A stretch of 64,000 nucleotides of DNA, from assembly GCF_036365525.1 (NCBI RefSeq), contig NC_090399.1, positions 46,284,430-46,348,429 of the forward strand, written 5' to 3'. How positions within the stretch are numbered: position 1 is the stretch's first letter; the number at the start of each line of letters is the position of its first letter. The stretch is from Heterodontus francisci. Its lineage: Eukaryota. The position numbers and the translations under genes are program-made. The notes under the pieces were generated by a model. That model made no database searches. It was not told where the DNA came from and saw only the letters and a list, made by a program, of their open reading frames with translations. Shown piece after piece: positions 38,801-61,811 of this stretch.

Positions 38801-41800
38801 GGAAACAGAGAGACACAGGGGAAAGCGAGAGAAATAGGGGAAACAGAGAGACACAGGGGAAACAGAGAGAAATGGGGGAAAGAGAGAGACACAGGGGAAA
38901 CAGAGAAACAAGCAGAAACGGAGAGACACAGGGGAAAGAGAGAGACACAGGGGATACAGAGAGACACAGGGGAAACAGAGAGACACAGGGGAAAGCGAGA
39001 GAAATAGGGGAAACAGAGAGACACAGGGGAAACAGAGAGAAATGGGGGAAAGAGAGAGACACAGGGGAAAGAGAGGGACACAGGGGAAAGAGAGAGAAAT
39101 CGGGGAACGAGAGAGACACAGGGGAAAGAGAGAGAAATAGGGGTAACAGAGAGAAATAGGGGAAAGAGAGTAACAGGGGAAACAGAAAGAAACAGGGGAA
39201 ACAGAGAGACACAGGGGAAACAGAGAGAAATAGGGGAAACAGAGAGACACGGGGAAACAGAGAGAAATTGGGGAAACAGAGAGAAATAGGGGAAACAGAG
39301 AGACACAGGGGAAAGAGAGAGACACAGGGGAAACAGAGAGACACAGGGGAAAGAGAGAGAAATGGGGGAAACAGAGTCACAGGGGAAGCAGAGAGAAATA
39401 GGGGAAACAGAGTCACAGGGGAAACAGAGAGAAATAGGGAAAAGAGAGAGACACAGGGGAAAGAGGGAGAAATAAGGGAAACAGAGTCACAGGGGAAACA
39501 GGGGAAACGCAGAGACACAGGGGAAAGAGAGAGATATAGGTGAAACAGAGAGAAATGGGGGAAACAGAGTCACAGGGGAAACAGAGAGAAATAGGGGAAA
39601 AAGAGAGACACAGGGCAAAGAGAGAGAAATAAGGGACAGAGAGAGAAATAGGGCAAACAGGGTCATGGGGAAACAGAGAGAAATAGTGGAAAGAGAGAGA
39701 CACAGGGGAAAGAGAGAAAATTAAGGGAAAGTGAGAAAATTAGGGGAAAGAGAGGGACACAGGGGAAAGAGAGAGAAATCGGGGAACGAGAGAGACAGAG
39801 GGGAAAGAGAGAGAAATAGGGGTAACAGAGAGAAATAGGGGAAAGAGAGACACAGGGGAAACAGAGAGAAACAGGGGAAACGCAGAGACACAGGGGAAAG
39901 AGAGAGACACAGGTAAAACAGAGAGAAATGGGGGAAAGAGAGAGAAATAAGGGAAACAGAGTCACAGTAGAAACTGAGAGAAATAGGGGAAAGAGAGAGA
40001 CACAGGGGAAAGAGAGAGACACAGGTGAAACAGAGAGAAATGGGGGAAAGAGAGAGAAATAGGGGAAACAGAGTCACAGGGAAAACTGAGAGAAATAGCG
40101 AAAAGATAGAGACACAGGGGAAAGAGAGAGAAATTGGGGAAAGAGAGAGACACAGGGGAAAAAGAGAAAAATAGGGGAAAGAGAGGGACACAGGGGAAAG
40201 AGAGAAATAGGGGAAAGAGAGAGACACAGGGGATACAGAGAGTCACAGGGGAAACAGGGAGACACCGAAGAAACAGAGAGTCACAGGGGAAACAGAGAGA
40301 CACAGGTGAAACAGAAAGAAATTGAGGAAACAGAGAAAATAGCGGAAACAGAGAGAAATCGGGGAAACAGAGACATACAGGGGAAAGAGAGAGAAATAGG
40401 GGAAACAGAGAGAAATCGGGGAAACAGAGATATACAGGGGAAAGAGAGAGAAATAGGGGAAACAGAGATATACAGGGGAAAGAGAGAGAAATAGGGGAAA
40501 CAGAGAGACACAGGGGAAACGGAGAGAAATAGGGGAAACAGAGAGACACAGAAGAAACGGAGAGAAATAGGGGAAACAGAGAGACACAGGGGAAAGAGAG
40601 AGAAATAGGGGAAATAGAGAGACACAGGGGACAGAGAGAGACACCGGGGAAATGCAGAGACACAGGGGAAGGAGAGAGACACAGGTGAAACAGAGAGAAA
40701 TGGGGGAAACAGAGACACGGGGGAAACAGAGACACAGGGGAAACAGAGAGAAATAGGGGAAAGAGAGAGACACAGGGGACAGAGAGAGAAATAGGGGAAA
40801 CAGAGTCACAGGGGAAACAGAGAGAAACAGGGGAAACGCAGAGATACAGGGGAAAGAGAGAGACACAGGTGAAACAGAGAGAAATGGGGGTAACAGAGAC
40901 ACAGGGGAAAGAGAGAGAAATAAGCGACAGAGAGAGAAATAGGGCAAACAGAGTCACAGGGGAAACAGAGAGAAATAGCAAAAAGAGAGAGACACAGGGG
41001 AAACAGTGAGAAATAGGGGAAAGAGAGTGACACAGCGGAAAGAGAGAAAATTAAGGGAAAGAGAGAAAATTAAGGGAAAGAGAGAAAATTAAGGGGAAAC
41101 ACAGATAAACAGGGGAAACAAAGAGACACAGGAGAAATGGGGGAAACAGAGAGACACAGGGGAAACACAGAGAAATAGGGGAAACAGAGAGAAAAGGGGA
41201 AACAGAGAGACACAGGGGTAACAGAGAGTTAAAGGGGAAACAGAGAGACACAGGGGAAAGAGAGAAAGGCAGGGGAAATAGAGAATCACAGGGGAAACAG
41301 AGTGTCTAAGAGGAAACAGCGAGTCATGGGGTAATCGAGAGAAACAGGGGAACAGAGAGGCACAGGGGAAACAGAGAAGCACAGGGGAAACACAGAGACA
41401 CTTGGGAAACAGATAGTCACAGGGGAAACACAGAGACACTTGGGAAACAGAGAAAAACAGGGGAAACAGAGAGACACAGGGGAAACAGGGAGACACAGGC
41501 GAGACGTGGAGACACAGGGGAAATAGAGAGACACAGGGGAAACAGAGAGACACGGGGGAAACAGGGAGACACAGGTGAAATGCAGGGGAAACAGAGAGAC
41601 ACAGGGGAAACAGAGAGTCACAAGGGAAACAGACAGTCTCAGGGGAAACAGACAGTCTCAGGGGAAAGAGAGAAACACTGGGGAAGGAGAGAGACACTGG
41701 GGAAGGAGGGAGACACTGGGGAAAGAGAGAGTCACAAGGGAAACAGACAGACACAGGGGAAATAGAGAGACACAGGAGAAACACAGGGGAAACAGAGAGA

Positions 41801-44800
41801 AATAGGGGAAAAAGAGAGACACAGGGCAAAGAGAGAGAAATAAGGGACAGAGAGAGAAATAGGGCAAACAGGGTCATGGGGAAACAGAGAGAAATAGTGG
41901 AAAGAGAGAGACACAGGGGAAAGAGAGAAAATTAAGGGAAAGAGAGAAAATTAGGGGAAAGAGAGGGACACAGGGGAAAGAGAGAGAAATCGGGGAACGA
42001 GAGAGACAGAGGGGAAAGAGAGAGAAATAGGGGTAACAGAGAGAAATAGGGGAAAGAGAGACACAGGGGAAACAGAGAGAAACAGGGGAAACGCAGAGAC
42101 ACAGGGGAAAGAGAGAGACACAGGTGAAACAGAGAGAAATGGGGGAAAGAGAGAGAAATAAGGGAAACAGAGTCACAGTAGAAACTGAGAGAAATAGGGG
42201 AAAGAGAGAGACACAGGGGAAAGAGAGAGACACAGGTGAAACAGAGAGAAATGGGGGAAAGAGAGAGAAATAGGGGAAACAGAGTCACAGGGAAAACTGA
42301 GAGAAATAGCGAAAAGATAGAGACACAGGGGAAAGAGAGAGAAATTGGGGAAAGAGAGAGACACAGGGGAAAAAGAGAAAAATAGGGGAAAGAGAGGGAC
42401 ACAGGGGAAAGAGAGAAATAGGGGAAAGAGAGAGACACAGGGGATACAGAGAGTCACAGGGGAAACAGGGAGACACCGAAGAAACAGAGAGTCACAGGGG
42501 AAACAGAGAGACACAGGTGAAACAGAAAGAAATTGAGGAAACAGAGAAAATAGCGGAAACAGAGAGAAATCGGGGAAACAGAGACATACAGGGGAAAGAG
42601 AGAGAAATAGGGGAAACAGAGAGAAATCGGGGAAACAGAGATATACAGGGGAAAGAGAGAGAAATAGGGGAAACAGAGATATACAGGGGAAAGAGAGAGA
42701 AATAGGGGAAACAGAGAGACACAGGGGAAACGGAGAGAAATAGGGGAAACAGAGAGACACAGAAGAAACGGAGAGAAATAGGGGAAACAGAGAGACACAG
42801 GGGAAAGAGAGAGAAATAGGGGAAATAGAGAGACACAGGGGACAGAGAGAGACACCGGGGAAATGCAGAGACACAGGGGAAGGAGAGAGACACAGGTGAA
42901 ACAGAGAGAAATGGGGGAAACAGAGACACGGGGGAAACAGAGACACAGGGGAAACAGAGAGAAATAGGGGAAAGAGAGAGACACAGGGGACAGAGAGAGA
43001 AATAGGGGAAACAGAGTCACAGGGGAAACAGAGAGAAACAGGGGAAACGCAGAGATACAGGGGAAAGAGAGAGACACAGGTGAAACAGAGAGAAATGGGG
43101 GTAACAGAGACACAGGGGAAAGAGAGAGAAATAAGCGACAGAGAGAGAAATAGGGCAAACAGAGTCACAGGGGAAACAGAGAGAAATAGCAAAAAGAGAG
43201 AGACACAGGGGAAACAGTGAGAAATAGGGGAAAGAGAGTGACACAGCGGAAAGAGAGAAAATTAAGGGAAAGAGAGAAAATTAAGGGAAAGAGAGAAAAT
43301 TAAGGGGAAACACAGATAAACAGGGGAAACAAAGAGACACAGGAGAAATGGGGGAAACAGAGAGACACAGGGGAAACACAGAGAAATAGGGGAAACAGAG
43401 AGAAAAGGGGAAACAGAGAGACACAGGGGTAACAGAGAGTTAAAGGGGAAACAGAGAGACACAGGGGAAAGAGAGAAAGGCAGGGGAAATAGAGAATCAC
43501 AGGGGAAACAGAGTGTCTAAGAGGAAACAGCGAGTCATGGGGTTATCGAGAGAAACAGGGGAACAGAGAGGCACAGGGGAAACAGAGAAGCACAGGGGAA
43601 ACACAGAGACACTTGGGAAACAGATAGTCACAGGGGAAACACAGAGACACTTGGGAAACAGAGAAAAACAGGGGAAACAGAGAGACACAGGGGAAACAGA
43701 GAGACACAGGCGAGACGTGGAGACACAGGGGAAATAGAGAGACACAGGGGAAACAGAGAGACACGGGGGAAACAGGGAGACACAGGTGAAATGCAGGGGA
43801 AACAGAGAGACACAGGGGAAACAGAGAGTCACAAGGGAAACAGACAGTCTCAGGGGAAACAGACAGTCTCAGGGGAAAGAGAGAAACACTGGGGAAGGAG
43901 AGAGACACTGGGGAAGGAGAGAGACACTGGGGAAAGAGAGAGTCACAAGGGAAACAGAGAGACACAGGGGAAATAGAGAGACACAGGAGAAACACAGGGG
44001 AAACAGAGAAACACAGGGCAACAGAGAGACACAGGGGAAACATAGAAAAACAGGGGAAACAGAGAGTCGCAGGGGAAACAGAGAGTCGCAGGGGAAACTG
44101 GCAGATACAGGCGAAACAGAGAGACACAGGCTAAACCGGGAGACACAGGCGAAACCAAGAGGCACAAACGAAACCGAGAGACACAGGGGAAGCAGAGAAA
44201 AACAGGGGAAACAGAGAGACACAGGTGAAGCAGAGAGACACAGGTGAAACAGAGTCACAGGGAAACAGAGAGACAAGGGGAAAGAGAGAAACACAGGGGA
44301 AGGAGAGATACACAGGGGAAAGAGAGAGAAACAAGGGAAACAGAGAGATACAGGTGAAACAGAAAGAAATTGAGGAAACAGAGATATACAGGGGAAACAC
44401 AGATAAACAGGGGAAACTGAGAGACACAGGGGAAAAAGAGAAAATAGGGGAAACAGAGAGAAATCGGGGAAACAGAGACATACAGGGGAAAGAGAGAGAA
44501 ATAGGGGAAACAGAGAGAAATCGGGGAAACAGAGATATACAGGGGAAAGAGAGAGAAATAGGGGAAACAGAGATATACAGGGGAAAGAGAGAGAAATAGG
44601 GGAAACAGAGAGACACAGGGGAAACGGAGAGAAATAGGGGAAACAGAGAGACACAGAGGAAACGGAGAGAAATAGGGGAAACAGAGACACGGGGGAAACA
44701 GAGACACAGGGGAAACAGAGAGAAATAGGGGAAAGAGAGAGACACAGGGGACAGAGAGAGAAATAGGGGAAACAGAGTCACAGGGGAAAGAGAGAGAAAC

Positions 44801-46100
44801 AGGGGAAACGCAGAGATACAGGGGAAAGAGAGAGACACAGGTGAAACAGAGAGAAATGGGGGAAAAAGAGACACAGGGGAAAGAGAGAGAAATAAGCGAC
44901 AGAGAGAGAAATAGGGCAAACAGAGTCACAGGGGAAACAGAGAGAAATAGCAAAAAGAGAGAGACACAGGGGAAACAGTGAGAAATAGGGGAAAGAGAGT
45001 GACACAGCGGAAAGAGAGAAAATTAAGGGAAAGAGAGAAAATTAAGGGAAAGAGAGAAAATTAAGGGGAAACACAGATAAACAGGGGAAACAAAGAGACA
45101 CAGGAGAAATGGGGGAAACAGAGAGACACAGGGGAAACACAGAGAAATAGGGGAAACAGAGAGAAAAGGGGAAACAGAGAGACACAGGGGTAACAGAGAG
45201 TTAAAGGGGAAACAGAGAGACACAGGGGAAAGAGAGAAAGGCAGGGGAAATAGAGAATCACAGGGGAAACAGAGTGTCTAAGAGGAAACAGCGAGTCATG
45301 GGGTTATCGAGAGAAACAGGGGAACAGAGAGGCACAGGGGAAACAGAGAAGCACAGGGGAAACACAGAGACACTTGGGAAACAGATAGTCACAGGGGAAA
45401 CACAGAGACACTTGGGAAACAGAGAAAAACAGGGGAAACAGAGAGACACAGGGGAAACAGAGAGACACAGGCGAGACGTGGAGACACAGGGGAAATAGAG
45501 AGACACAGGGGAAACAGAGAGACACGGGGGAAACAGGGAGACACAGGTGAAATGCAGGGGAAACAGAGAGACACAGGGGAAACAGAGAGTCACAAGGGAA
45601 ACAGACAGTCTCAGGGGAAACAGACAGTCTCAGGGGAAAGAGAGAAACACTGGGGAAGGAGAGAGACACTGGGGAAGGAGAGAGACACTGGGGAAAGAGA
45701 GAGTCACAAGGGAAACAGAGAGACACAGGGGAAATAGAGAGACACAGGAGAAACACAGGGGAAACAGAGAAACACAGGGCAACAGAGAGACACAGGGGAA
45801 ACATAGAAAAACAGGGGAAACAGAGAGTCGCAGGGGAAACAGAGAGTCGCAGGGGAAACTGGCAGATACAGGCGAAACAGAGAGACACAGGCTAAACCGG
45901 GAGACACAGGCGAAACCAAGAGTCACAAACGAAACCGAGAGACACAGGGGAAGCAGAGAAAAACAGGGGAAAAGGAGAGACACAGGTGAAGCAGAGAGAC
46001 ACAGGTGAAACAGAGTCACAGGGAAACAGAGAGACAAGGGGAAAGAGAGAAACACAGGGGAAGGAGAGAAACACAGGGGAAAGAGAGAGAAACAAGGGAA
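35850..46100. repeat. Higher-order repeat domain with 1828, 2211 and 1761 bp periods
   Basis: Identical pseudo-ORF pairs: 37440/39268 and 37835/39663 (1828); 39962/42173 and 41051/43262 (2211); 43262/45023 and 43513/45274 (1761). Boundaries are approximate. Confidence 0.85.
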
Positions 46101-46199
46101 GCAGAATGATACAGGGGAAGGAGAGAGTCACAGGGGAAGGAGAGAAACACAGGGGAAAGAGAGAAACACAGGGGAAAGAGAGAGACACAGGGGAAAGAG

Positions 46200-49100
46200 A
46201 GAGACACAGGGGAAACAGAGAGACACAGGGGAAACAGAGAAACAAGCAGAAACGGAGAGACACAGGGGAAATAGAGATTCACAGAGGATACAGAGAGACA
46301 CAGGGGAAACAGAGAGACACAGGGGAAACAGAGAGAAATAGGGGAAAGAGAGATAAATAGGGGAAACACAGAGACACAGGGGAAAGAGACAGAAATAGGG
46401 GAAACAGAGTGACACAGGGGAGAGAGAGAGAAAGAGGGGGATCAGACAGACACCGGGGAAACAGACAGAGACCGGGGAAACAGAAGGACACAGGGGAAAG
46501 AGAGAGAAATAGGGGAAAAAGACAGACACCGGCGAAACAGAGAGACACAGGGGAAACAGCGAGAAATAGGGGAGAGAGAAATCGGGGAAACAGAGTCACG
46601 GGGAAGCACAGAGAAATAGGGGAAATAGAGAGACACAGGGGAAACAGAGAGAAATAGGGGAAACAGAGTCACAGTAGAAACTGAGAGAAATAGGGGAAAG
46701 AGAGAGACACAGGTGAAAGAGAGAGAAATAAGGGACAGAGAGAGAAATAGGGGAAACAGAGTCACAGGGGAAACAGAGAGAAATAGCGGAAAGATAGAGA
46801 CACAGGGGAAAGAGAGAGAAATAGCAGAAAGATAGAGCCACAGGGGAAACAGAGAGAAATAGGGGAAAGCGAGAGACACAGGGGAAAGAGAGAAAAATAG
46901 GGGAAAGCGAGGGACACAGGGGAAAGAGAGAAAATTAAGGGAAAGAGAGAGACACAGGGGAAAGAGAGAGAAATAGGGGATACAGAGAGACACAGGGGAA
47001 AGAGAGAGAAATAGGGGAAACAAAGTGTCACAGGGGAAACAGAGAAATAGGGGAAACTGAGAGACACAGGGGAAACAGAGCGAAATAGGGGAAACAGAGA
47101 GAAATAGGGGATACAGAGAGAAATAGGGGATACAGAGATTCACAGGGGAAACAGGGAGAAATAGGGGAAAGCGAGGGACACAGGGGAAAGAGAGAAAATT
47201 AAGGGAAAGAGAGAGACACAGGGGAAAGAGAGAGACACAGAGGAAACAGAGAGAAATAGGAGAAACAGAGAGACACAGGGGAAACAGAGCGAAATAGGGG
47301 AAACAGAGAGAAATAGGGGAAACTGAGAGACACAGGGGAAACGGAGAGAAACAGGAGAAACAGAGAGACACAGGGGAAACAGAGCGAAATAGGGGAAACA
47401 GAGAGAAATAGGAGAAACAAAGTGTCACAGGGGAAACAGAGAAATAGGGGAAACTGAGAGACACAGGGGAAACAGAGCAAAATAGGGGAAACAGAGAGAA
47501 ATAGGGGAAACAGAGAGAAATAGTGGATACAGAGTGTCACAGGGGAAACAGGGAGAAATAGGGGAAAGAGAGAGACACAGCGGAAAGAGAGAGAAATAAG
47601 GGAAACAGAGAGACACAGGGGAAAGAGAGAGACACAGGGGAAACAAAGTGTCACAGGGGAAACAGAGAAATAGGGGAAACTGAGAGACACAGGGGAAACA
47701 GAGCAAAATAGGGGAAACAGAGAGAAATAGGAGAAACAGAGAGACACAGGGGAAACGGAGAGATATAGGGGAAACAGAGAGAAATAAGGGAAACAGAGAG
47801 ACACAGGGGAAAGAGAGAGAAATAGGGGAAACAAAGTGTCACAGGGGAAACAGAGAAATAGGGGAAACTGAGAGACACAGGGGAAACAGAGCGAAATAGG
47901 GGAAACAGAGAGAAATAGGGGATACAGAGAGAAATAGGGGATACAGAGAGTCACAGGGGAAACAGGGAGAAATAGGGGAAAGCGAGGGACACAGGGGAAA
48001 GAGAGAAAATTAAGGGAAAGAGAGAGACACAGGGGAAAGAGAGAGACACAGAGGAAACAGAGAGAAATAGGAGAAACAGAGAGACACAGGGGAAACAGAG
48101 CGAAATAGGGGAAACAGAGAGAAATAGGGGAAACTGAGAGACACAGGGGAAACGGAGAGAAACAGGAGAAACAGAGAGACACAGGGGAAACAGAGCGAAA
48201 TAGGGGAAACAGAGAGACACAGGGGAAAGAGAGAGAAATAGGGGAAACAAAGTGTCACAGGGGAAACAGAGAAATAGGGGAAACTGAGAGACACAGGGGA
48301 AACAGAGCGAAATAGGGGAAACAGAGAGAAATAGGAGAAACAGAGAGACACAGGGGAAACGGAGAGAAAGAGGGGAAACAGAGAGAAATAAGGGAAACAG
48401 AGAGACACAGGGGAAAGCGATAGAAATAGGGGAAACAGAGAGACACAGGGGACACAGAGAGACACCGGGAAAACGCAGAGACACAGGGGAAACAGAGATA
48501 AATAGGGGAAAGAGGGAGACACAGGGGAAAGAGAGAAAATTAAGGGAAAGAGAGGGACACGGGGAAAGAGAGAGAAATAAGGGACAGAGAAAGAAATAGG
48601 GCAAACAGAGTCACAGAGGAAACAGAGAGAAATAACGGAAAGAGAGAGACACAGGGGAAAGAGAGAAAATTAAGGGAAAGAGAGGGACACAGGGGAAAGA
48701 GAGAGAAATAGGGGTAACAGAGCGAAATAGGGGACAGAGAGAGACACGGGGGAAACAGAGAGACACAGGGGAAACAGAGAAACAAGCAGAAACGGAGAGA
48801 CACAGGGGAAATAGAGATTCACAGAAGATACAGAGAGACACAGGGGAAACAGAGAGACACAGGGGAAGGCGAGAGAAATGGGGGAAACAGTGTCACAGGG
48901 GAAACAGAGAGAAATAGGGGAAAGAGAGAGACACAGGGGAAACAGAGAGACACAGGGGACACAGTGAGACACCAGGAAAACGCAGAGACACAGGGGAAAG
49001 AGAGAGACACAGGTGAAACAGAGAGAAATGGGGGAAACAGTGTCACAGGGGAAACAGAGAGAAATAGGGGAAAGAGAGAGACACAGGGGAAACAGAGAGA

Positions 49101-52100
49101 AATAGGGGAAAGAGAGAGACACAGGGGAAAGAGAGAAAAGTAAGGGAAAGAGAGGGACACAGGGGAAAGAGAGAGAAATAGGGGAAAGAGAGAGACACAG
49201 GGGAAAGAGAGAGAAATAGGGGTAACAGAGCGAAATAGGGGATAGAGAGAGACACGGGGGAAACAGAGTGACACAGGGGAAAGAGAGAGAAATAGGGGAA
49301 AGAGAGAGACACAGGGGAAAGAGAGAGAAATAGGGGTAACAGAGCGAAATAGGGGATAGAGAGAGACACGGGGGAAACAGAGAGACACAGGGGAAACAGA
49401 GAGAAATAGGGGATAGAGAGAGACATGGGGGAAACAGAGAGACACAGGGCAAAGAGAGCGAAATAGGGGATAGAGAGAGACACGGGGGAAACAGAGAGAC
49501 ACAGGGGAAACAGAGAAACAAGCAGAAACGGAGAGACACAGGGGAAATAGAGATTCACAGAGGATACAGAGAGACACAGGGGAAACAGAGAGACACAGGG
49601 GAAACAGAGAGAAATAGGGGAAAGAGAGATAAATAGGGGAAACACAGAGACACAGGGGAAAGAGCCAGAAATAGGGGAAACAGAGTGACACCGGGGAGAG
49701 AGAGAGAAAGAGGGGGATCAGACAGACACCGGGGAAACAGACAGACACCGGGGAAACAGAAAGACACAGGGGAAACGGAGAGAAATAGGGGAAACAGAGA
49801 GACACAGGGGAAACAGAGTCACAGTGGAAACAGAGAGAAACAGGGGAAACAGAGAGACACAGGGGAAAGAGAGAGAAATAGGGGAAACAGACAGACACCG
49901 GCGAAACAGAGAGACACAGGGGAAACAGCGAGAAACAGGGGAAAGAGAGAGAAATCGGGGAAACAGAGTCACGGGGAAGCAGCGAGAAATAGGGGAAATA
50001 GAGAGACACGGGAAACAGAGAGAAATAGGGGAAACAGAGTCACAGTAGAAACTGAGAGAAATAGGGGAAAGAGAGTCACAGGGGAAACAGAGAAAAATAG
50101 CGGAAAGATAGAGACACAGGGGAAACAGAGAGAAATAGGGGAAAGAGAGAGACACAGGTGAAAGAGAAAGAAATAAGGGACAGAGAGAGAAATAGGGGAA
50201 ACGGAGTCACAGGGGAAACAGAGAGAAATAGCGGAAAGATAGAGACACAGGGGAAAGAGAGAAAAATAGGGGAAAGTGAGGGACACAGGGGAAAGAGAGA
50301 GACACAGAGGAAACAGAGAGAAATAGGGGATAGAGAGAGACACGGGGGAAACAGAGAGACACAGGGGAAACAGAGAAACAAGCAGAAACGGAGAGACACA
50401 GGGGAAATAGAGATTCACAGAGGATACAGAGAGACACAGGGGAAACAGAGAGACACAGGGGAAACAGAGAGAAATAGGGGAAAGAGAGATAAATAGGGGA
50501 AACACAGAGACACAGGGGAAAGAGCCAGAAATAGGGGAAACAGAGTGACACCGGGGAGAGAGAGAGAAAGAGGGGGATCAGACAGACACCGGGGAAACAG
50601 ACAGACACCGGGGAAACAGAAAGACACAGGGGAAACAGAGAGAAATAGGGGAAACAGAGAGACACAGGGGAAACAGAGTCACAGTGGAAACAGAGAGAAA
50701 CAGGGGAAACAGAGAGACACAGGGGAAAGAGAGAGAAATAGGGGAAACAGACAGACACCGGCGAAACAGAGAGACACAGGGGAAACAGCGAGAAACAGGG
50801 GAAAGAGAGAGAAATCGGGGAAACAGAGTCACGGGGAAGCAGCGAGAAATAGGGGAAATAGAGAGACACGGGAAACAGAGAGAAATAGGGGAAACAGAGT
50901 CACAGTAGAAACTGAGAGAAATAGGGGAAAGAGAGTCACAGGGGAAACAGAGAAAAATAGCGGAAAGATAGAGACACAGGGGAAACAGAGAGAAATAGGG
51001 GAAAGAGAGAGACACAGGTGAAAGAGAAAGAAATAAGGGACAGAGAGAGAAATAGGGGAAACGGAGTCACAGGGGAAACAGAGAGAAATAGCGGAAAGAT
51101 AGAGACACAGGGGAAAGAGAGAAAAATAGGGGAAAGTGAGGGACACAGGGGAAAGAGAGAGACACAGAGGAAACAGAGAGAAATAGGGGATACAGAGAGT
51201 CACAGGGGAAACAGGGAGAAATAGGGGAAAGAGAGAGAAATAGGGGAAACAGAGAGACACAGGGGAAACAGAGAGACACAGGGGAAACAGAGAGAAATAG
51301 GGGAAACTGAGAGACACAGGGGAAACAGAGCGAAATAGGGGAAACAGAGAGAAATAGGAGAAACAGAGAGACACAGGGGAAACAGAGAAAAATTGGGGAA
51401 ACAGAGAGAAATCGGGGAAACACAGATAAACAGGGGAAACAGAGAGACACAGGGGAAACGGAGAGATATAGGGGAAACAGAGAGAAATAGGGGAAACAGA
51501 GAGACACAGGGAAAACGCAGAGACACAGGGGAAAGAGAGAGACACAGGGGAAAGAGAGAGACACAGGGGACACAGAGAGACACGGGGGAAACAGAGAGAC
51601 ACAGAGGAAAGAGAGGAAGGCAGGGGAAATAGAGAAATACAGGTGAAACAGAGTGTCTAAGAGGAAACAGCGAGTCATGGGGTTATAGAGAGAAACAGGG
51701 GAACAAAGTGTCACAGGGGAAACAGAGCAAAATAGGGGAAACAGAGAGAAATAGGGGAAACAGAGAGAAATAGGGGATACAGAGTGTCACAGGGGAAACA
51801 GGGAGAAATAGGGGAAAGAGAGAGACACAGCGGAAAGAGAGAGAAATAGGGGAAACAGAGAGACACAGGGGAAAGAGAGAGAAATAGGGGAAACAAAGTG
51901 TCACAGGGGAAACAGAGAAATAGGGGAAACTGAGAGACACAGGGGAAACAGAGCGAAATAGGGGAAACAGAGAGAAATAGGAGAAACAGAGAGACACAGG
52001 GGAAACGGAGAGATATAGGGGAAACAGAGAGAAATAAGGGAAACAGAGAGACACAGGGGAAAGAGAGAGAAATAGGGGAAACAAAGTGTCACAGGGGAAA

Positions 52101-55100
52101 CAGAGAAATAGGGGAAACTGAGAGACACAGGGGAAACAGAGCGAAATAGGGGAAACAGAGAGAAATAGGGGATACAGAGAGAAATAGGGGATACAGAGAG
52201 TCACAGGGGAAACAGGGAGAAATAGGGGAAAGCGAGGGACACAGGGGAAAGAGAGAAAATTAAGGGAAAGAGAGAGACACAGGGGAAAGAGAGAGACACA
52301 GAGGAAACAGAGAGAAATAGGAGAAACAGAGAGACACAGGGGAAACAGAGCGAAATAGGGGAAACAGAGAGAAATAGGGGAAACTGAGAGACACAGGGGA
52401 AACGGAGAGAAACAGGAGAAACAGAGAGACACAGGGGAAACAGAGCGAAATAGGGGAAACAGAGAGAAATAAGAGAAACAAAGTGTCACAGGGGAAACAG
52501 AGAAATAGGGGAAACTGAGAGACACAGGGGAAACAGAGCAAAATAGGGGAAACAGAGAGAAATAGGGGATACAGAGTGTCACAGGGGAAACAGGGAGAAA
52601 TAGGGGAAAGAGAGAGACACAGCGGAAAGAGAGAGAAATAGGGGAAACAGAGAGACACAGGGGAAAGAGAGAGAAATAGGGGAAAGAGAGAGACACAGCG
52701 GAAAGAGAGAGACACAGGGGAAACAGAGCGAAATAGGGGAAACAGAGAGAAATAGGGGAAAGCGATAGAAATAGGGGAAACAGAGAGACACAGGGGACAC
52801 AGAGAGACACCGGGAAAACGCAGAGACACAGGGGAAAGAGAGAGACACAGGTGAAACAGAGAGAAATAGGGGAAAGAGGGAGACACAGGGGAAAGAGAGA
52901 AAATTAAGGGAAAGAGAGGGACACGGGGAAAGAGAGAGAAATAAGGGACAGAGAAAGAAATAGGGCAAACAGAGTCACAGAGGAAACAGAGAGAAATAAC
53001 GGAAAGAGAGAGACACAGGGGAAAGAGAGAAAATTAAGGGAAAGAGAGGGACACAGGGGAAAGAGAGAGAAATAGGGGTAACAGAGCGAAATAGGGGACA
53101 GAGAGAGACACGGGGGAAACAGAGAGACACAGGGGAAACAGAGAAACAAGCAGAAACGGAGAGACACAGGGGAAATAGAGATTCACAGAAGATACAGAGA
53201 GACACAGGGGAAACAGAGAGACACAGGGGAAGGCGAGAGAAATGGGGGAAACAGTGTCACAGGGGAAACAGAGAGAAATAGGGGAAAGAGAGAGACACAG
53301 GGGAAACAGAGAGACACAGGGGACACAGTGAGACACCAGGAAAACGCAGAGACACAGGGGAAAGAGAGAGACACAGGTGAAACAGAGAGAAATGGGGGAA
53401 ACAGTGTCACAGGGGAAACAGAGAGAAATAGGGGAAAGAGAGAGACACAGGGGAAACAGAGAGAAATAGGGGAAAGAGAGAGACACAGGGGAAAGAGAGA
53501 AAAGTAAGGGAAAGAGAGGGACACAGGGGAAAGAGAGAGAAATAGGGGAAAGAGAGAGACACAGGGGAAAGAGAGAGAAATAGGGGTAACAGAGCGAAAT
53601 AGGGGATAGAGAGAGACACGGGGGAAACAGAGTGACACAGGGGAAAGAGAGAGAAATAGGGGAAAGAGAGAGACACAGGGGAAAGAGAGAGAAATAGGGG
53701 TAACAGAGCGAAATAGGGGATAGAGAGAGACACGGGGGAAACAGAGAGACACAGGGGAAACAGAGAGAAATAGGGGATAGAGAGAGACACGGGGGAAACA
53801 GAGAGACACAGGGGAAACAGAGAAACAAGCAGAAACGGAGAGACACAGGGGAAATAGAGATTCACAGAGGATACAGAGAGACACAGGGGAAACAGAGAGA
53901 CACAGGGGAAACAGAGAGAAATAGGGGAAAGAGAGATAAATAGGGGAAACACAGAGACACAGGGGAAAGAGCCAGAAATAGGGGAAACAGAGTGACACCG
54001 GGGAGAGAGAGAGAAAGAGGGGGATCAGACAGACACCGGGGAAACAGACAGACACCGGGGAAACAGAAAGACACAGGGGAAACAGAGAGAAATAGGGGAA
54101 ACAGAGAGACACAGGGGAAACAGAGTCACAGTGGAAACAGAGAGAAACAGGGGAAACAGAGAGACACAGGGGAAAGAGAGAGAAATAGGGGAAACAGACA
54201 GACACCGGCGAAACAGAGAGACACAGGGGAAACAACGAGAAACAGGGGAAAGAGAGAGAAATCGGGGAAACAGAGTCACGGGGAAGCAGCGAGAAATAGG
54301 GGAAATAGAGAGACACGGGAAACAGAGAGAAATAGGGGAAACAGAGTCACAGTAGAAACTGAGAGAAATAGGGGAAAGAGAGTCACAGGGGAAACAGAGA
54401 AAAATAGCGGAAAGATAGAGACACAGGGGAAACAGAGAGAAATAGGGGAAAGAGAGAGACACAGGTGAAAGAGAAAGAAATAAGGGACAGAGAGAGAAAT
54501 AGGGGAAACGGAGTCACAGGGGAAACAGAGAGAAATAGCGGAAAGATAGAGACACAGGGGAAAGAGAGAAAAATAGGGGAAAGTGAGGGACACAGGGGAA
54601 AGAGAGAGACACAGAGGAAACAGAGAGAAATAGGGGATAGAGAGAGACACGGGGGAAACAGAGAGACACAGGGGAAACAGAGAAACAAGCAGAAACGGAG
54701 AGACACAGGGGAAATAGAGATTCACAGAGGATACAGAGAGACACAGGGGAAACAGAGAGACACAGGGGAAACAGAGAGAAATAGGGGAAAGAGAGATAAA
54801 TAGGGGAAACACAGAGACACAGGGGAAAGAGCCAGAAATAGGGGAAACAGAGTGACACCGGGGAGAGAGAGAGAAAGAGGGGGATCAGACAGACACCGGG
54901 GAAACAGACAGACACCGGGGAAACAGAAAGACACAGGGGAAACGGAGAGAAATAGGGGAAACAGAGAGACACAGGGGAAACAGAGTCACAGTGGAAACAG
55001 AGAGAAACAGGGGAAACAGAGAGACACAGGGGAAAGAGAGAGAAATAGGGGAAACAGACAGACACCGGCGAAACAGAGAGACACAGGGGAAACAGCGAGA

Positions 55101-56050
55101 AACAGGGGAAAGAGAGAGAAATCGGGGAAACAGAGTCACGGGGAAGCAGCGAGAAATAGGGGAAATAGAGAGACACGGGAAACAGAGAGAAATAGGGGAA
55201 ACAGAGTCACAGTAGAAACTGAGAGAAATAGGGGAAAGAGAGTCACAGGGGAAACAGAGAAAAATAGCGGAAAGATAGAGACACAGGGGAAACAGAGAGA
55301 AATAGGGGAAAGAGAGAGACACAGGTGAAAGAGAAAGAAATAAGGGACAGAGAGAGAAATAGGGGAAACGGAGTCACAGGGGAAACAGAGAGAAATAGCG
55401 GAAAGATAGAGACACGGGGAAAGAGAGAAAAATAGGGGAAAGTGAGGGACACAGGGGAAAGAGAGAGACACAGAGGAAACAGAGAGAAATAGGGGATACA
55501 GAGAGTCACAGGGGAAACAGGGAGAAATAGGGGAAAGAGAGAGACACAGCGGAAAGAGAGAGAAATAGGGGAAACAGAGAGACACAGGGGAAACAGAGAG
55601 ACACAGGGGAAACAGAGAGAAATAGGGGAAACTGAGAGACACAGGGGAAACAGAGCGAAATAGGGGAAACAGAGATAAATAGGAGAAACAGAGAGACACA
55701 GGGGAAACAGAGAAAAATTGGGGAAACAGAGAGAAATCGGGGAAACACAGATAAACAGGGGAAACAGAGAGACACAGGGGAAATGGAGAGAAATAGGGGA
55801 AACAGAGAGACACAGGGGAAACGGAGAGATATAGGGGAAACAGAGAGAAATAGGGGAAACAGAGAGACACAGGGAAAACGCAGAGACACAGGGGAAAGAG
55901 AGAGACACAGGGGAAAGAGAGAGACACAGGGGACACAGAGAGACACGGGGGAAACAGAGAGACACAGAGGAAAGAGAGGAAGGCAGGGTAAATAGAGAAA
56001 TACAGGTGAAACAGAGTGTCTAAGAGGAAACAGCGAGTCATGGGGTTATA
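46200..56050. repeat. Higher-order repeat domain: 860-bp duplication nested in a ~4.3-kb duplication
   Basis: Pseudo-ORF 'MTPGRERERGGSDRH' occurs at 49685, 50545, 53992 and 54852 (offsets 860 and 4307). Other offsets: 48540/52904 (4364) and 47651/51901 (4250). Confidence 0.85.
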
Positions 56051-56484
56051 GAGAGAAACAGGGGAACAGAGAGGCACAGGGGAAACAGAGAGGCACAGGG
56101 TTATAGAGAGACACGGGGGACATAGGGAGACACAGGGGAAACAGAAACACAGGGAAACAGAGAGTCATGGGGTTATAGAGAGAAACAGGGGAAACAGAGA
56201 GGCACAGAGGAAACAGAGAGAAATAGGGGATACAGAGAGTCACAGGGGAAACAGGGAGAAATAGGGGAAAGAGAGAGACACAGCGGAAAGAGAGAGAAAT
56301 AGGGGAAACAGAGAGACACAGGGGAAACAGAGAGGCACAGGGTTATAGAGAGACACGGGGGACATAGGGAGACACAGGGGAAACAGAAACACAGGGAAAC
56401 AGAGAGTCATGGGGTTATAGAGAGAAACAGGGGAAACAGAGAGGCACAGGGGAAACAAAATAAAAACAGGGGAAACAGGAGACA

Positions 56485-58497
56485 CATAGAAACACAGAAA
56501 ATAGGAGCAGGAGTAGGCCATTCGGCCCTTTGAGCCTGCTCCGCCATTCATTAGATCATGGCTGATCATTCAAATCATTGACCTGTTCCCGATTTCGCCC
56601 CATATCCTTTGATCCTTTTTAACCTAAGCGCTATATCTAACTCCTTCTTGAAAACATATGATATGTTGGCTTCAACTGCTTTCTGTGGTAACGAATTCCA
56701 TAGGCTCACCACTCTTTGGGTGAAGTAATTTCTCCTCGTCTCAGTCCTGAAAGGTTTAACCCATATCCGTGGACTATGACCCCTGGTTCTGGACTCCCCC
56801 ACCATCGGGAACATCCTTCCTGCATCTACCCTGTCAAGTCCTGTTAGAATTTTATAGGTTTCTATGAGATCCCCCTTCTTCTGAATTCCAGCGAATATAA
56901 ACCTAACCAACTCAATCTCTCCTCATATGTCAGTCCCGCCATCCCAGGAATCAGTCTGGCAAACCTTCATTGCACTCCCTTTATAGCAAGGTCATCCTCC
57001 CTCAGATAAGGAGACCAAAACTGCACAGAATAATACAGGTGTGGCCTCACCAAGGCCCTGTATAATTGCAGCAAGACATCCCTGCTTCTGTACTCGAATC
57101 CTCTCGCTATGAAGGCCAACATACCATTTGTCTTTTTTACCGCCTGTTGCACCTGCATGCTTACCTTCTGCGACTGTTGTACGAGAACACCTAGGTCTTG
57201 CTGCATATTCCCCTCTCTCAGTTTATAGCAGTTCAGATAATAATCTGCCTTCCTGTTTTTGCTACCAAAATGGATAACCTCACATTTATTCACATTATAC
57301 TGCATCTGCCATGCATTAGCCCACTCACTCAACTTGTCCAAATCACCCTGAAGCCTCTCTGCATCCTCTTCACAACTCACCATCCCAACCAGTTTTGTGT
57401 CATCTGCAAATTTGGAGTTATTACATTTAGTTCCCTCATGTAAATCATTCATATATATTGTGAATAGCTGGGGTCCTGGCCCAAATCCCTGCAGTACCCC
57501 ACTAGTCACTGCCTGCCATTTGGAAAAAGACCCATTGATCCCTACTCTTTGTTTCCTGTCTGCCAACCAATTTTCTATCCATCACAATACACTATCCCCA
57601 ATCCCATGTGCTTTAATTTTACATGTTAATCTCTTATGTGGGACTTTGTCGAAAGCCTTCTGAAAGTCCAAATAAACCATATCCACTGGCTCCCCCTCAT
57701 CAACTCTACTAGTTACATCCTCGAAGAAATCTGCTAGATTTGTCAAGCATGATTTCCCTTTCGTAAATCCATGCTGACACTGCCCGATTCTACCACTCTT
57801 CTCCAAATGTTCTGCTATAAAATCTTTGATAATGGACTCTAGAATTTTCCCCACTACTGATGTCAGGCTGACTGGTCTATAATTCCTTGCTTTCTCTCTA
57901 CCTCCCTGTTTAAATAGTGGGGTTACAGTAGCTACCCTCCAATCTGTAGGAACTGTTCCAGAGTCTATAGAATCTTGGAAGATGACCAACAATGCATCCA
58001 CTATTCCTAGGGCCACTTCCATAAGTTCTCTGGGATGCAGACCATCAGTCCCTGGGGATTTATCGGCCTTCAATCCCATCAATTTCCCCAACACTATTTC
58101 TCTACCAATACTGATTTCCTTCAAGTTCCTGTCTCTCACTAAACCCTGTGTTCCCCAACATTTCTCGTATTATATTTGTGTCCTCCTTTGTGAAGACAGA
58201 ACCAAAGTATGCATTTAGTTGGTCAGCCAATTTTAATTCCCCATAAGAAATTCCCCTGCTTCTGATTGTGAGGGACCTACATTTGTCTTCACCAATCTTT
58301 TTCTCTTCACCTACCTATAGAAATGTTTACAGTCAGTTTTTATGTACCCCGCAAGCTTGCTCTCCTACTCTATTTTACTCTTCTTAATCAATCCTTGGTC
58401 CTCCTTTGCTGAATTCTAAACTGCTCCCAATCCTCAGGTCTGTTGTTTTTTCTGGAAAATTTATATGCCTCTTCCTTGGATCTAATGCTATCTCTAA
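56485..58497 (-). mobile_element. 5'-truncated CR1-clade LINE (3' half of ORF2, 3'UTR and octamer tail), elasmobranch HER1-like
   Basis: Minus-strand frames carry RT motifs: KSPGTDGLHP, NYRPVSLTS, QHGF, YLDFQKAFDKVPH, GVLQG, LFTIYMNDL, KFADDTKL, plus the CR1 C-terminal motifs RPHLxY/WSP and FTQRVVSLWNSLP. The 3' end reads ...GGCCGAATGGCCTACTCCTGCTCCTAT followed by TTTCTGTG TTTCTATG (56500-56485), a CR1-type octamer tail. Confidence 0.95.
56575..58139 (-). pseudogene. Disrupted CR1 ORF2 reverse transcriptase
   Basis: Split into three consecutive ORF pieces (57582-58139, 56967-57566, 56575-56910) by stops or frameshifts. The endonuclease domain is absent. Confidence 0.92.
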
Positions 58498-59075
58498 AGA
58501 GACATGGGGAATAGACAGACAAGGTGGGCATAGAGAGATACAGGGGGAATAGAGAGACAAAGTGAAAATAGAGATATACAGGATTAGCGAGATAGGGGGA
58601 TTAGAGTGATACAGAGGTTCAGTGAGACACGTGGGGAATAGAGAAATACAGGGGAATAGAGAAACATAGGGAATAAGGGACAAGGGGGGCAATAGAGGGA
58701 AACGGGGGGCAGTAAAGAGACACAGGGAGAAGAGACATGGGGGATTAGAGGGACATGGAGGGCAATAGAGGGACACGGGAGGAATAGAGAGACTTGGGGA
58801 TTAGAGGGTCACGTTGGGAATAGAGTAACACAGGGTTCCAGAGAAACAAGGGCAAATAGAGAGTCATGGGTTCGGGGGGGGGGGGGGGGGGGGTGGGAAT
58901 AAAGCGACACAGTGGCATAGAGAGAGACGGGAGAGTAGAGAGACATGGGAAATAGAGAGACATGGGGAATTGAGAGACAAGAAGGAAGAGAGAGTCACGG
59001 GGAGAATAGACAGACACGGAGGGAATAGAGAGATACAGGAGGAAAAGCATGATGTGGTGGAGAATTGAGAGACAC
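58498..59075. repeat. Highly degenerate remnant of the AG-rich satellite (~18-19 bp unit, GAGACAYGGGGAATAGA-like)
   Basis: Units such as GAGACATGGGGAATAGA, GAAATACAGGGGAATAGA and GAGACACAGGGAGAA have the same strand polarity as the main array. It shares the GAGTCATGGG variant (58861) with the right-hand part of the array. Confidence 0.8.
58874..58893 (+). repeat. G20 homopolymer
   Basis: 20 consecutive G, read directly. Confidence 0.95.
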
Positions 59076-59432: not shown

Positions 59433-59447
59433 TGGCCCTGCTCGCAA

Positions 59448-59453
59448 ACTCAC
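59448..59453 (-). promoter_or_regulatory. 5' splice donor GTGAGT of the MHC alpha-1 exon
   Basis: Plus-strand actcac is the reverse complement of the consensus GTGAGT, directly after the NQTS(G) codons. Confidence 0.85.
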
Positions 59454-59715
59454 CACTAGTCTGGTTGTTCAGGGACATAAGGTATGTAATGGCAAATTTC
59501 AGATCCTGCTCCACCTCTAGCATGAACTGTGTTTGCTGCTTAGTGTGTATGAGTTCCAAAATCTCTGTCAGCCATTGATCCCGGTGTGTAAACTTCTTCC
59601 GATCATTGTCGTACGTAGCAACATGCGCCTCATCAAGATAAGCAACCATCTGAAACTCCGGGAGATTGGGAATCTGAAGTTATGAATGTGAAGAAACCCT
59701 GGAGAGAGTGAGAGC
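59454..59715 (-). pseudogene. MHC class I heavy chain alpha-1 domain exon (exon 2), non-classical type, with an apparent +1 frameshift (pseudogene or consensus error)
   Basis: Minus strand: acceptor tctctctctctatctctgttttAG|GC TCT CAC TCT CTC = (G)SHSL; donor AAC CAG ACT AGT G|GTGAGT. Both introns are phase 1, as in class I exon 2. Removing one base near 59675-59678 gives (G)SHSLQGFFTFITxIPNLPEFQMVAYLDEAHVATYDNDRKKFTHRDQWLTEILELIHTKQQTQFMLEVEQDLKFAITYLMSLNNQTS(G). This matches the alpha-1 hallmarks GSHSL, LPEF, [G/A]YxD, YD, W51 and the N86 NQT sequon. The exon is 262 bp (87 codons + 1). Confidence 0.9.
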
Positions 59716-59745
59716 CTAAAACAGAGATAGAGAGAGAGAGACATC
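59716..59745 (-). promoter_or_regulatory. 3' splice acceptor and polypyrimidine tract of the MHC alpha-1 exon
   Basis: Minus strand reads ...gatgtctctctctctctatctctgttttag; the AG is at 59717-59716. Confidence 0.85.
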
Positions 59746-59814
59746 AGGACTTGAACCTCCAAATACCAAACCCACATAGTGAGACATCAAGGCACGAACT
59801 CCAAAACACCAGAG

Positions 59815-60353
59815 ACGTAGTCAGTATGGCACAGAAGGAGGCCATTCAGCCCATTGGTCCATGCCAGATCTCCCTGAGCAGTCCAGCCAATCCCACTCCC
59901 CCACTCTATCCCTGTCGCTCTGCAATTTATTTCCCTCGAGTGCCCATCCAATTTCCCTTTGAAATCTCCACTTACACCACACTTGTAGGAGCGAGTTCCA
60001 GGTCATTACCACTCGTTGCATATAAATTTCTTCCTCATAATCCCCCTGCGTCTCTTGCCCAAAGCCTTCAATCTGTGTTTCCCAATCTTTGTACCTTTAG
60101 TTAATAGCAACAGCTTTCCTCTGTCCACCTTTCCAAACCTGCCAAAATCTTGAAACCCTCTGTCAAATTTCCCCTCAATCTCCTTTACTCCAACAGCAAC
60201 CGAGCTTCTCCAACATAATCTTGCAGCAAAAATCCCTCATCCCTGGAACCATTCTACCTTCTCACAGAACCTTCCGAAAGTGTGGTGGCCGGAACTGAAC
60301 ACAATACACTCGTTGTAGACTAACAAGAGCTTGAGAAAGATTTAGCACAACTT
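59815..60353 (-). mobile_element. Old, degenerate CR1 3'-end fragment
   Basis: Minus frame QRVVMTWNSL (compare TQRVVSLWNSLP in the 56.5-kb copy). The 3'UTR GGCTGAATGGCCTCCTTCTGTGCC parallels GGCCGAATGGCCTACTCCTGCTCC. Many indels. Boundaries are approximate. Confidence 0.85.
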
Positions 60354-61759: not shown

Positions 61760-61811
61760 TTTGGCAGGGGGTGGGGATGCAGATTCCAAGCAGAATAGGG
61801 ACACAGGAAAG

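What the first reader, a model, noticed from the sequence alone, without database searches (positions are those of the whole stretch)
59454..59715. Hidden, divergent non-classical MHC class I alpha-1 exon
Seen: a 262-bp minus-strand exon with consensus phase-1 splice sites, starting GSHSL and ending NQTS(G). Established: classical class I alpha-1 domains keep Y7, Y59 and Y84 (R84 in non-mammals) to anchor peptide termini. By eye alignment these positions here are G7, H59 (with W60 to T) and L84, and the helix is hydrophobic (FMLEVEQDLKFAITYLM). Inference: this belongs to a non-classical class I lineage, possibly binding hydrophobic or non-peptide ligands. It could be a known cartilaginous-fish lineage (UBA/UCA/UDA/UEA/UFA) or an undescribed one. 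Automated annotation could easily miss it among repeats.
Basis: partly seen in the sequence, partly recalled or inferred. Interest (0 to 1): 0.85.

Follow-up and report, generated by a model that had tools for sequence, protein, structure and literature searches.

The report
Expressed divergent shark class Ib exon
This is a real, transcribed and correctly spliced alpha-1 exon of an apparently unannotated non-classical MHC class I gene of a shark; it belongs to a fast-evolving offshoot of the known UBA-type family, not to a new lineage, and its apparent frameshift is an assembly error.

Summary
The exon at 59454-59715 (minus strand) is real. RNA-like contigs from the same animal cover exactly the exon. 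At both predicted splice sites they run on into a class I leader (…LVLLCGGVSA) and an alpha-2 start (GIHMLQVRTG).

The window copy is 262 bp and frameshifted. Every DNA and RNA contig that spans the site lacks base 59675, so the exon is 261 bp and open (87 codons).

It is not a new lineage. Its nearest relatives (49% in alpha-1) are two annotated horn-shark genes, XP_067865829.1 and XP_067865827.1. The three form a 100/100 clade nested inside the multicopy clade that holds the 1997 horn-shark and nurse-shark class Ib cDNAs, which I take to be UBA.

No protein in the public collections searched carries this alpha-1, so the gene seems unannotated. Neither the alpha-2 start nor the leader end lies in the window, so intron 2 exceeds 59 kb, mostly a 19-bp satellite.

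The scan has already followed up another expressed UBA-type gene 3.9 Mb away and noted satellite-filled MHC introns elsewhere in this genome.

The parts
59454..59715 (-). Alpha-1 exon of a non-classical (UBA-type) MHC class I gene. The window copy is 262 bp; the read-supported form is 261 bp, or 87 codons: GSHSLQGFFTFITSIPNLPEF...YLMSLNNQTS.
   Evidence: Sequence and translations. Pfam MHC_I E=8.4e-5. 6LUP is the best PDB match. RNA-like contigs X5 record 17 and X7 record 25 cover 59453-59716 with 0 other letters.
59675..59675 (-). Extra base in the assembly that causes the apparent frameshift. It is absent from all DNA and RNA contigs that span it.
   Evidence: table 4: 'left out 1' at 59675 in X1, X3, X5 and X7. 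Sequence context.
59716..59745 (-). 3' splice site of intron 1: a polypyrimidine tract followed by AG.
   Evidence: ctctctctctctatctctgttttag|GC. The RNA contig leaves the genome at 59716 and continues as leader-coding sequence ...LVLLCGGVSA.
59448..59453 (-). 5' splice site of intron 2 (G|gtgagt).
   Evidence: The RNA contigs leave the genome at 59453 and continue as G IHMLQVRTG, an alpha-2 start.
8..56486 (-). A 19-bp satellite of about 3,000 copies that fills most of the visible part of intron 2. On the gene strand it is 85% pyrimidine, with only 2.1 AG per kb.
   Evidence: TRF, period 19, 77% matches. Composition. No alpha-2 or alpha-3 anywhere in the window by tblastn or pattern search.
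58498..59044 (-). Degenerate copies of the same 19-20-bp satellite, proximal in intron 2.
   Evidence: TRF; sequence.
56578..58230 (-). Reverse-transcriptase fragment of a LINE, inserted in the satellite within intron 2.
   Evidence: Pfam RVT_1, E=1.1e-12 and 1.3e-9 on two ORFs; ORF list.
59790..60330 (-). 3' tail of a high-copy LINE/SINE-type repeat in intron 1, just upstream of the exon.
   Evidence: Contig word depth reaches 3.2e5 at 59824-59847 in the DNA runs. An ORF carries an RVVMTWNSLLQ motif like the LINE 3' ORF at 56575-56910. Identified by eye, not by a repeat library.

Best explanation
The stretch is the alpha-1 exon of an intact, transcribed, membrane-type non-classical MHC class I gene. 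The animal is most likely the horn shark, Heterodontus francisci. The gene is a third and apparently unannotated member of a small subfamily. The other two members are annotated as XP_067865829.1 and XP_067865827.1, and the subfamily branches inside the multicopy UBA-type class Ib family.

Shown here:
- The exon is spliced at the predicted sites to a typical class I leader and to an alpha-2 exon that lies outside the window. Intron 2 therefore exceeds 59 kb and is mostly a pyrimidine-rich satellite.
- The one-base frameshift in the window is an assembly error.
- The domain lacks all three alpha-1 residues that clamp peptide ends in classical molecules (G7, H59, L84 in human numbering) and also W60.

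Inferred:
- The protein folds like class I, pairs with beta-2-microglobulin and sits in the membrane, as its full-length paralogs would.
- It cannot hold peptides by their termini in the classical way.
- It either binds another kind of ligand in a somewhat more hydrophobic, low-charge groove, or acts mainly as a surface ligand for lymphocyte receptors.
- In this subfamily alpha-1 is the fastest-evolving domain, which fits divergence driven by ligand or receptor.
For: Exon, frame and splicing.

Class I identity.

Loss of anchors and departure from conserved positions: the domain differs at 9 of 25 positions that are at least 90% conserved in 49 elasmobranch alpha-1 domains, more than any reference (highest 7).

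Subfamily:
- 43/87 identities to P0209 and 42/87 to P0168. Shared derived residues are LQGF, IPNLPEF, YLD, RD-W and YLMSLN-Q. The alpha-2 start is 9/10 identical to that of P0209.
- Alpha-1 tree: window+P0209 99/83, the trio 100/99, inside a 29-row clade at 100/88.
- Full-length tree: the trio 100/100, inside an 18-row clade at 100/99 that holds O19480_HETFR and O19479_GINCI.

Leader: the last 10 residues are identical to those of horn-shark proteins P0081, P0102 and P0055.

Domain rates: P0209 against P0168 is 94% identical in the leader, 49% in alpha-1, 70% in alpha-2, 88% in alpha-3 and 85% in the TM/tail.

Paralog alpha-2 domains: by my motif mapping onto alignment A4, they have also lost T143, K146 and Y171 but keep W147 and Y159.

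Not annotated: no closer protein among 1.84 billion representatives or in three word-index searches.

Species and family name: an earlier follow-up note and reviews PMC12562908 and PMC10751288.
Against: - The alpha-2, alpha-3 and TM exons of this gene were not seen. Only 10 residues of alpha-2 came from an RNA loose end. Intactness of the whole gene is therefore inferred from a spliced transcript of good depth, not shown.
- The runs called RNA are only guessed to be RNA by the tool. I take them as RNA because the contigs are spliced and 25-45 times deeper than the DNA contigs, in runs about 16-20 times smaller.
- On alpha-1 alone the AU test does not formally reject placing the window row (p=0.26) or the trio (p=0.061) outside all the elasmobranch reference sequences. 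The nesting rests mainly on the full-length paralogs.
- I could not check by label that the clade is the one the literature calls UBA.
- No ligand or receptor evidence exists.
- A heterozygous frameshift allele cannot be strictly excluded from contigs alone.
Confidence: 0.75

Rival explanations
1. It is a dead relic: an orphaned, frameshifted alpha-1 pseudo-exon stranded next to a giant satellite, with no partner exons.
For: The window copy is 262 bp and out of frame. No alpha-2 or alpha-3 exon and no leader end is found anywhere in the 64 kb. 56 kb of satellite follows the exon.
Against: All DNA and RNA contigs lack the extra base. RNA-like contigs at word depth 136 and 74 join the exon in frame to a leader and to an alpha-2 start.
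Confidence: 0.04
2. It represents an old, undescribed class I lineage, separate from UAA and UBA. The apparent nesting in the UBA-type clade would then be an artefact of fast evolution and gene conversion of the leader and alpha-3.
For: Only 35-45% identity to any alpha-1 outside its two paralogs. The trio sits on a long stem (0.52-0.6 changes per column). AU tests on alpha-1 alone do not reject an outside position (p=0.26 and 0.061). No orthologue was found in other species.
Against: Full-length paralogs sit inside the UBA-type clade with 100/99 and 99/88 support. The alpha-1 alignment with UAA/UBA is gapless. The leader is identical. The RE/DQW motif and the Thr before Gly-Cys at the alpha-2 start are shared with UBA-type genes.
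Confidence: 0.08
3. It belongs to one of the hydrophobic-groove shark lineages already described: UEA or UCA, or the CD1-like UFA or UGA.
For: It has lost the invariant anchors and has a relatively hydrophobic helix, as I recall the UEA/UCA abstracts reporting. UFA and UGA are described as CD1-like lipid binders (PMC10751288 and PMC12562908).
Against: The closest sequences are UBA-type. A search of 1.84 billion representatives with the C-terminal 75 residues found nothing closer than 37%, and the elasmobranch hits among them were UAA-like. Two PDB class I-like chains of unstated origin (8gm8, 9ch4) match worse than classical 6LUP.
Confidence: 0.06

Closest known systems
XP_067865829.1 (P0209), Heterodontus francisci 'MHC class I-related gene protein-like isoform X1', 354 aa
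   Same: Nearest relative. 43/87 identities in alpha-1 with no gaps. Shares Q6-G7, IPNLPEF, YLD, RD-W and YLMSLN-QT. The alpha-2 start GIHTLQVRTG compares with GIHMLQVRTG here. Sister in both trees, at 99/83 and 99/82.
   Different: Half of the alpha-1 residues differ, especially in the helix (15/39 identical). It keeps P55 and G25, where the window gene has L and A. It is a different gene, because the alpha-2 start differs by one residue.
XP_067865827.1 (P0168), Heterodontus francisci, 332 aa
   Same: 42/87 identities in alpha-1. Shares YLDE, DRKK, RDQW, MSLN and loss of Y7, Y59 and R84. It is the third member of the 100/100 clade.
   Different: It has I7 rather than G7, keeps W60, and has a different helix. 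Its accession number is adjacent to the other paralog's, which suggests neighbouring genes.
Shark UBA-type class Ib family (clade holding O19480_HETFR, O19479_GINCI, P0081, P0102 and members from six shark orders)
   Same: The trio nests inside this clade (100/99). Same leader, same domain lengths, the RE/DQW motif, Thr at the alpha-2 position where UAA has Tyr, and near-identical alpha-3 in the paralogs.
   Different: Ordinary members keep Y7, W60 and R84 and lose only Y59. The window gene loses all four. It differs at 9 of 25 highly conserved alpha-1 positions, against 3 or fewer for most members.
Nurse-shark classical class I UAA (PDB 6LUP)
   Same: Best solved-structure match. Gapless over 86 residues at 37% identity. 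The N-glycosylation sequon is conserved at the end of alpha-1.
   Different: 6LUP has Y7, Y59, W60 and R84 and binds peptides. The window gene has G, H, T and L at those positions.
UEA/UCA and the CD1-like UFA/UGA shark lineages
   Same: A functional resemblance only: loss of the peptide-terminus anchors and a more hydrophobic binding region. UFA and UGA are reported as lipid binders (PMC12562908).
   Different: No sequence evidence of membership. These are described as older lineages separate from UAA/UBA, whereas this gene nests in the UBA-type clade.

Membership tests
MHC class I heavy chain, alpha-1 domain (Pfam PF00129 MHC_I) | Significant sequence match to class I alpha-1 | tested here: met
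   Pfam E=8.4e-5, 22.7 bits. This is below the whole-protein cut-off of 28.3, but only 70 of 179 profile positions were offered. phmmer to 6LUP E=2.6e-4. blastp of the 87-aa domain E=4e-24 to P0168, gapless.
MHC class I heavy chain, alpha-1 domain (Pfam PF00129 MHC_I) | One-domain exon in phase 1 at both ends, spliced between the leader and alpha-2 exons | tested here: met
   RNA-like contigs cover 59453-59716 and run on into ...LVLLCGGVSA upstream and GIHMLQVRTG downstream, in frame.
MHC class I heavy chain, alpha-1 domain (Pfam PF00129 MHC_I) | N-glycosylation sequon at the end of alpha-1 (human N86) | tested here: met
   N84-Q-T in shark numbering is retained.
Classical class I (UAA) | Alpha-1 residues that bind peptide termini: Y7, Y59, Y/R84 | tested here: not met
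   G7, H59 and L84, and also W60 to T, under the HMM alignment to 6LUP and the gapless alignment to 49 elasmobranch sequences.
Classical class I (UAA) | Alpha-2 residues T143, K146, W147, Y159, Y171 | not testable with these tools
   The alpha-2 exon is outside the window. By my motif mapping onto the alignment, the two paralogs have A/V, N, W, Y and C at these positions.
Classical class I (UAA) | High polymorphism and ubiquitous expression | not tested
   Only one animal was seen. A second near-identical copy or allele (F9L) appears in the DNA contigs.
Shark UBA class Ib lineage | Phylogenetic nesting with the founding horn-shark and nurse-shark class Ib cDNAs | tested here: met
   The trio lies inside the clade with O19480_HETFR and O19479_GINCI: 100/88 on alpha-1 and 100/99 on full length. 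The AU test on alpha-1 alone is borderline (p=0.061).
Shark UBA class Ib lineage | That this clade is the one named UBA in the literature | tested here: inconclusive
   Inferred from three things. PMC12562908 calls UBA expanded, derived from UAA, and cites Bartl 1997. The clade is multicopy and nested in UAA. An earlier follow-up note uses the same name. The primary papers were not held.
Shark UBA class Ib lineage | Location in the UBA gene cluster of the MHC chromosome (flanked by c4 and rxrb, PMC10751288) | not testable with these tools
   No flanking genes lie in the window. [quoted passage not shown]
UDA lineage | Eight of nine invariant peptide-terminus residues conserved (recalled from the 2020 abstract, not verified here) | tested here: not met
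   0 of 3 alpha-1 anchors are kept.
UEA/UCA and UFA/UGA lineages | Clustering with labelled members of these lineages | not testable with these tools
   No labelled sequences could be fetched. Indirect evidence is against membership.

The most novel reading that the evidence does not exclude
The window gene, XP_067865829 and XP_067865827 form a distinct, rapidly diversifying sublineage of shark class Ib molecules. It split from ordinary UBA before the galeomorph orders diverged. It has given up binding peptides by their termini altogether. Each paralog would present a different non-peptide or hydrophobic ligand, or engage a different lymphocyte receptor. Its genes would tolerate satellite-filled introns of tens of kilobases.
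Probability: 0.2. Interest if true: 0.6.

Novelty: new member of a known kind. Interest (0 to 1): 0.35.

Why it matters
Three points matter.

1. It adds an expressed gene that seems missing from the annotation of a reference shark genome. The likely reasons are a one-base assembly error in the exon and an intron 2 of more than 59 kb made of satellite. The fault can be fixed.

2. It shows that a class I gene is spliced correctly across about 3,000 copies of a pyrimidine-rich 19-bp repeat. Other notes of this scan point to the same habit in other MHC genes of this genome.

3. It defines, with two annotated paralogs, a UBA-derived subfamily. Alpha-1 identity between the two annotated paralogs has fallen to 49% while alpha-3 stays at 88%, and the classical peptide clamps are gone from alpha-1. 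For those who study the early diversification of class Ib molecules, this is a compact set of genes for testing what drives groove divergence.

It does not reveal a new lineage.

Tried and rejected
- A leader exon or alpha-2/alpha-3 exons in the window: none by tblastn with 12 class I proteins. The 30-letter RNA loose ends (tool output) are absent from the window even with 3 mismatches.
- A closer relative in the public protein universe using the C-terminal piece alone: best 37%.
- Earlier findings by sequence: blank.
- The primary UDA and UEA papers were not held. Searching for PDB codes 8GM8 and 9CH4 in papers gave only noise. A search for horn-shark UBA/UAA papers gave none.
The loci of the two paralogs, their introns and their distance from this window could therefore not be read.
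- The joined leader/alpha-1/alpha-2 model was not sent to any search. In the database tools the exon was searched as two pieces by reference. Only local scripts used the read-supported 261-bp form with base 59675 omitted.
- The pseudogene reading was rejected.
- The claim of a strongly hydrophobic groove was toned down.

Full report
**What is in the sequence.** On the minus strand, 59715 to 59454 reads ...ctctgttttag|GC TCT CAC TCT CTC ... ACT AGT G|gtgagt. That is a polypyrimidine tract and AG, then an open stretch beginning (G)SHSL and ending NQTS(G), then a consensus donor.

The window copy is 262 bp, which is not a multiple of three. It reads in two frames. SHSLQGFFTFITS... runs into a stop. 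...IPNLPEFQMVAYLDEAHVATYDNDRKKFTHRDQWLTEILELIHTKQQTQFMLEVEQDLKFAITYLMSLNNQTS is preceded by a stop.

The second piece matches Pfam MHC_I with E=8.4e-5 over profile positions 18-88. Its best solved structure is nurse-shark class I 6LUP, E=2.6e-4.

**The frameshift is not real.** Contigs of four public runs from one sample were laid on 59200-59900. Two runs are DNA-like and hold 92% of the sampled words. Two are small runs that the tool guesses to be RNA.

- Every contig that spans 59675 lacks that base: X1 18.9 of 24.6 depth, X3 20.6 of 23.4, X5 135.9 of 135.9, X7 73.9 of 73.9.
- The same DNA contigs differ from the window by three further single-base indels (59225, 59316, 59370) and by no substitution. 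That pattern fits consensus error in a long-read assembly, not allelic variation (contexts).
- Without base 59675 the exon is 261 bp and gives one open 87-codon domain, GSHSLQGFFTFITSIPNLPEFQMVAY...NNQTS.
- I made this read-through only in local scripts. In the database tools the exon was searched as two pieces by reference.

**It is expressed and spliced.**

- Contigs X5 record 17 (355 nt, word depth 136) and X7 record 25 (451 nt, depth 74) match 59453-59716 with no substitution. Beyond both ends they continue with sequence unlike the genome.
- Read on the gene strand, the upstream loose end encodes ...LVLLCGGVSA followed by the G that completes Gly1. The downstream one encodes G-IHMLQVRTG. 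These are a class I signal-peptide end and an alpha-2 start, both in frame.
- I take these runs as RNA for two reasons: the contigs are spliced, and their depth is 25-45 times that of the DNA contigs in runs about 16-20 times smaller.
- Neither loose end occurs in the window. tblastn with class I proteins finds only the alpha-1 exon.
- Intron 1 therefore exceeds 4.2 kb. It contains a 200-base N run that I left alone.
- Intron 2 exceeds 59.4 kb. Of this, 8-56486 is one array of about 3,000 copies of a 19-bp unit. A LINE reverse-transcriptase fragment interrupts it at 56578-58230.
- On the gene strand the array is 85% pyrimidine and has 2.1 AG per kb, against 74 per kb in intron 1. Few decoy acceptors might help explain why splicing across it works. 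That is an inference.

**Non-classical status.**

In human numbering they are Y7 to G, Y59 to H, W60 to T and R84 to L. In shark numbering these are positions 7, 57, 58 and 82.
- The domain differs at 9 of the 25 positions that are at least 90% conserved in the references. That is more than any reference; the highest is 7 and most have 3 or fewer.
- Residues 50-85 have a Kyte-Doolittle mean of -0.17, against -1.94 to -0.48 in the references.
- At 23 positions that face the groove in human class I, the mean is 1.08 with 2 charged residues. Classical shark molecules give 0.47-0.93, and ordinary UBA-type molecules 0.50-0.57 with 5-6 charged residues. 'Hydrophobic groove' is therefore true only in moderation.
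- The glycosylation sequon at the end of alpha-1 is kept.

**Which lineage.**

- A scan of 1.84 billion representative proteins with the 75-residue piece gave 12 hits, none above 37% identity. The elasmobranch hits among them, from a skate and a manta ray, have classical-looking alpha-1 domains.
- With profile searches that included the two exon pieces I collected about 200 class I proteins.
- An earlier follow-up note of this scan, on a gene 3.9 Mb away, names the genome as horn shark. In agreement, the leader end is identical to that of the Heterodontus francisci proteins P0081, P0102 and P0055.
- The closest alpha-1 domains are two annotated horn-shark proteins: P0168 = XP_067865827.1 (42/87) and P0209 = XP_067865829.1 (43/87).
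- They share derived features with the window gene: Q6-G7 (P0209), IPNLPEF, YLD, RD-W, and YLMSLN-Q with Leu in place of R84. The alpha-2 start of P0209 is 9/10 identical.
- In an alpha-1 tree of 64 rows the window row is sister to P0209 (99/83). The trio has 100/99 support and lies inside a 29-row clade (100/88).
- In a full-length tree the trio (100/100) lies inside an 18-row clade (100/99). That clade contains O19480_HETFR and O19479_GINCI. I take these to be the 1997 horn-shark and nurse-shark class Ib cDNAs. It also contains multicopy members from Pristiophorus, Mustelus, Scyliorhinus, Carcharodon, Hemiscyllium and Stegostoma.
- This matches what reviews say of UBA: expanded and derived from UAA (PMC12562908; PMC10751288). 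I could not verify the label from the primary papers, which were not held.
- On alpha-1 alone, AU tests do not formally reject a position outside all the elasmobranch references (p=0.26 for the window row; p=0.061 for the trio). The nesting therefore leans on the full-length paralogs.
- A search with residues 1-200 of P0209 found no closer relative in any other species. Either the subfamily is confined to Heterodontus among annotated genomes, or its members elsewhere are unannotated too.

**How it probably works.**

- The two full-length paralogs have alpha-3, a transmembrane segment and a tail. They are 88% identical to each other in alpha-3 but only 49% in alpha-1 and 70% in alpha-2. By my motif mapping onto the alignment, they have also lost T143, K146 and Y171.
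- I therefore infer a membrane class I-like molecule, paired with beta-2-microglobulin, that cannot clamp peptide termini. Its ligand-binding or receptor-facing surface is diverging fast between paralogs.
- Whether it carries a non-peptide ligand, an unconventionally bound peptide or nothing at all cannot be told from this evidence.

**Limits.**

- The rest of the gene was not seen.
- No groove model was made.
- The joined leader/alpha-1/alpha-2 model was not searched.

**Verdict.** Non-classical status is confirmed for alpha-1. The suggestion of a new lineage is not supported. This is a new and apparently unannotated member of a known family, with a notable giant satellite intron.

Noticed in passing
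window 8-56486: A single array of about 3,000 copies of a 19-bp unit (AGAGAGACACAGGGGAAAC on the + strand, 77% matches). On the gene strand it is 85% pyrimidine, with only 2.1 AG per kb but 84 GT per kb. It lies inside intron 2 of an expressed gene.
   Followed up: partly
window 59661-59846: The DNA contigs show a second copy of the exon start and the end of intron 1. It differs by 8 substitutions and 9 gap positions, only one of them in the exon (59692, F9 to L). It has about 2.5 times the word depth of the window's own version and also lacks base 59675. It could be an allele or a recent duplicate. The RNA contigs carry only the window's version.
   Followed up: partly
window 59225, 59316, 59370, 59675: Four single-base indels between the assembly and short-read contigs of the same sample within about 450 bp, with no substitutions. 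This suggests the assembly is under-polished here, so other apparent frameshifts in this genome may be artefacts.
   Followed up: partly
window 60912-63480 (+ strand): A run of ORFs with motifs that look, by eye, like LINE endonuclease and reverse transcriptase (FLLGDFNARGG..., LYKYKGD...NYCGISLLS). It is antisense to the class I gene, in intron 1. Pfam gave no hit at E<=0.01.
   Followed up: partly
window 63481-63680: A 200-base run of N in intron 1. It was left as it is. The leader exon could in principle lie in or beyond it.
   Followed up: no
window 59192-59370: Short 21-bp and 41-bp tandem repeats (ggagctctgtgtcc-type) just downstream of the donor site, between the exon and the satellite.
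   Followed up: no
proteins P0209 and P0168 (not in the window): By my motif mapping, both annotated paralogs carry a Cys where classical class I has Y171 (RSCLQ and KFCLQ). Their cytoplasmic tail differs from that of ordinary UBA-type genes.
   Followed up: no
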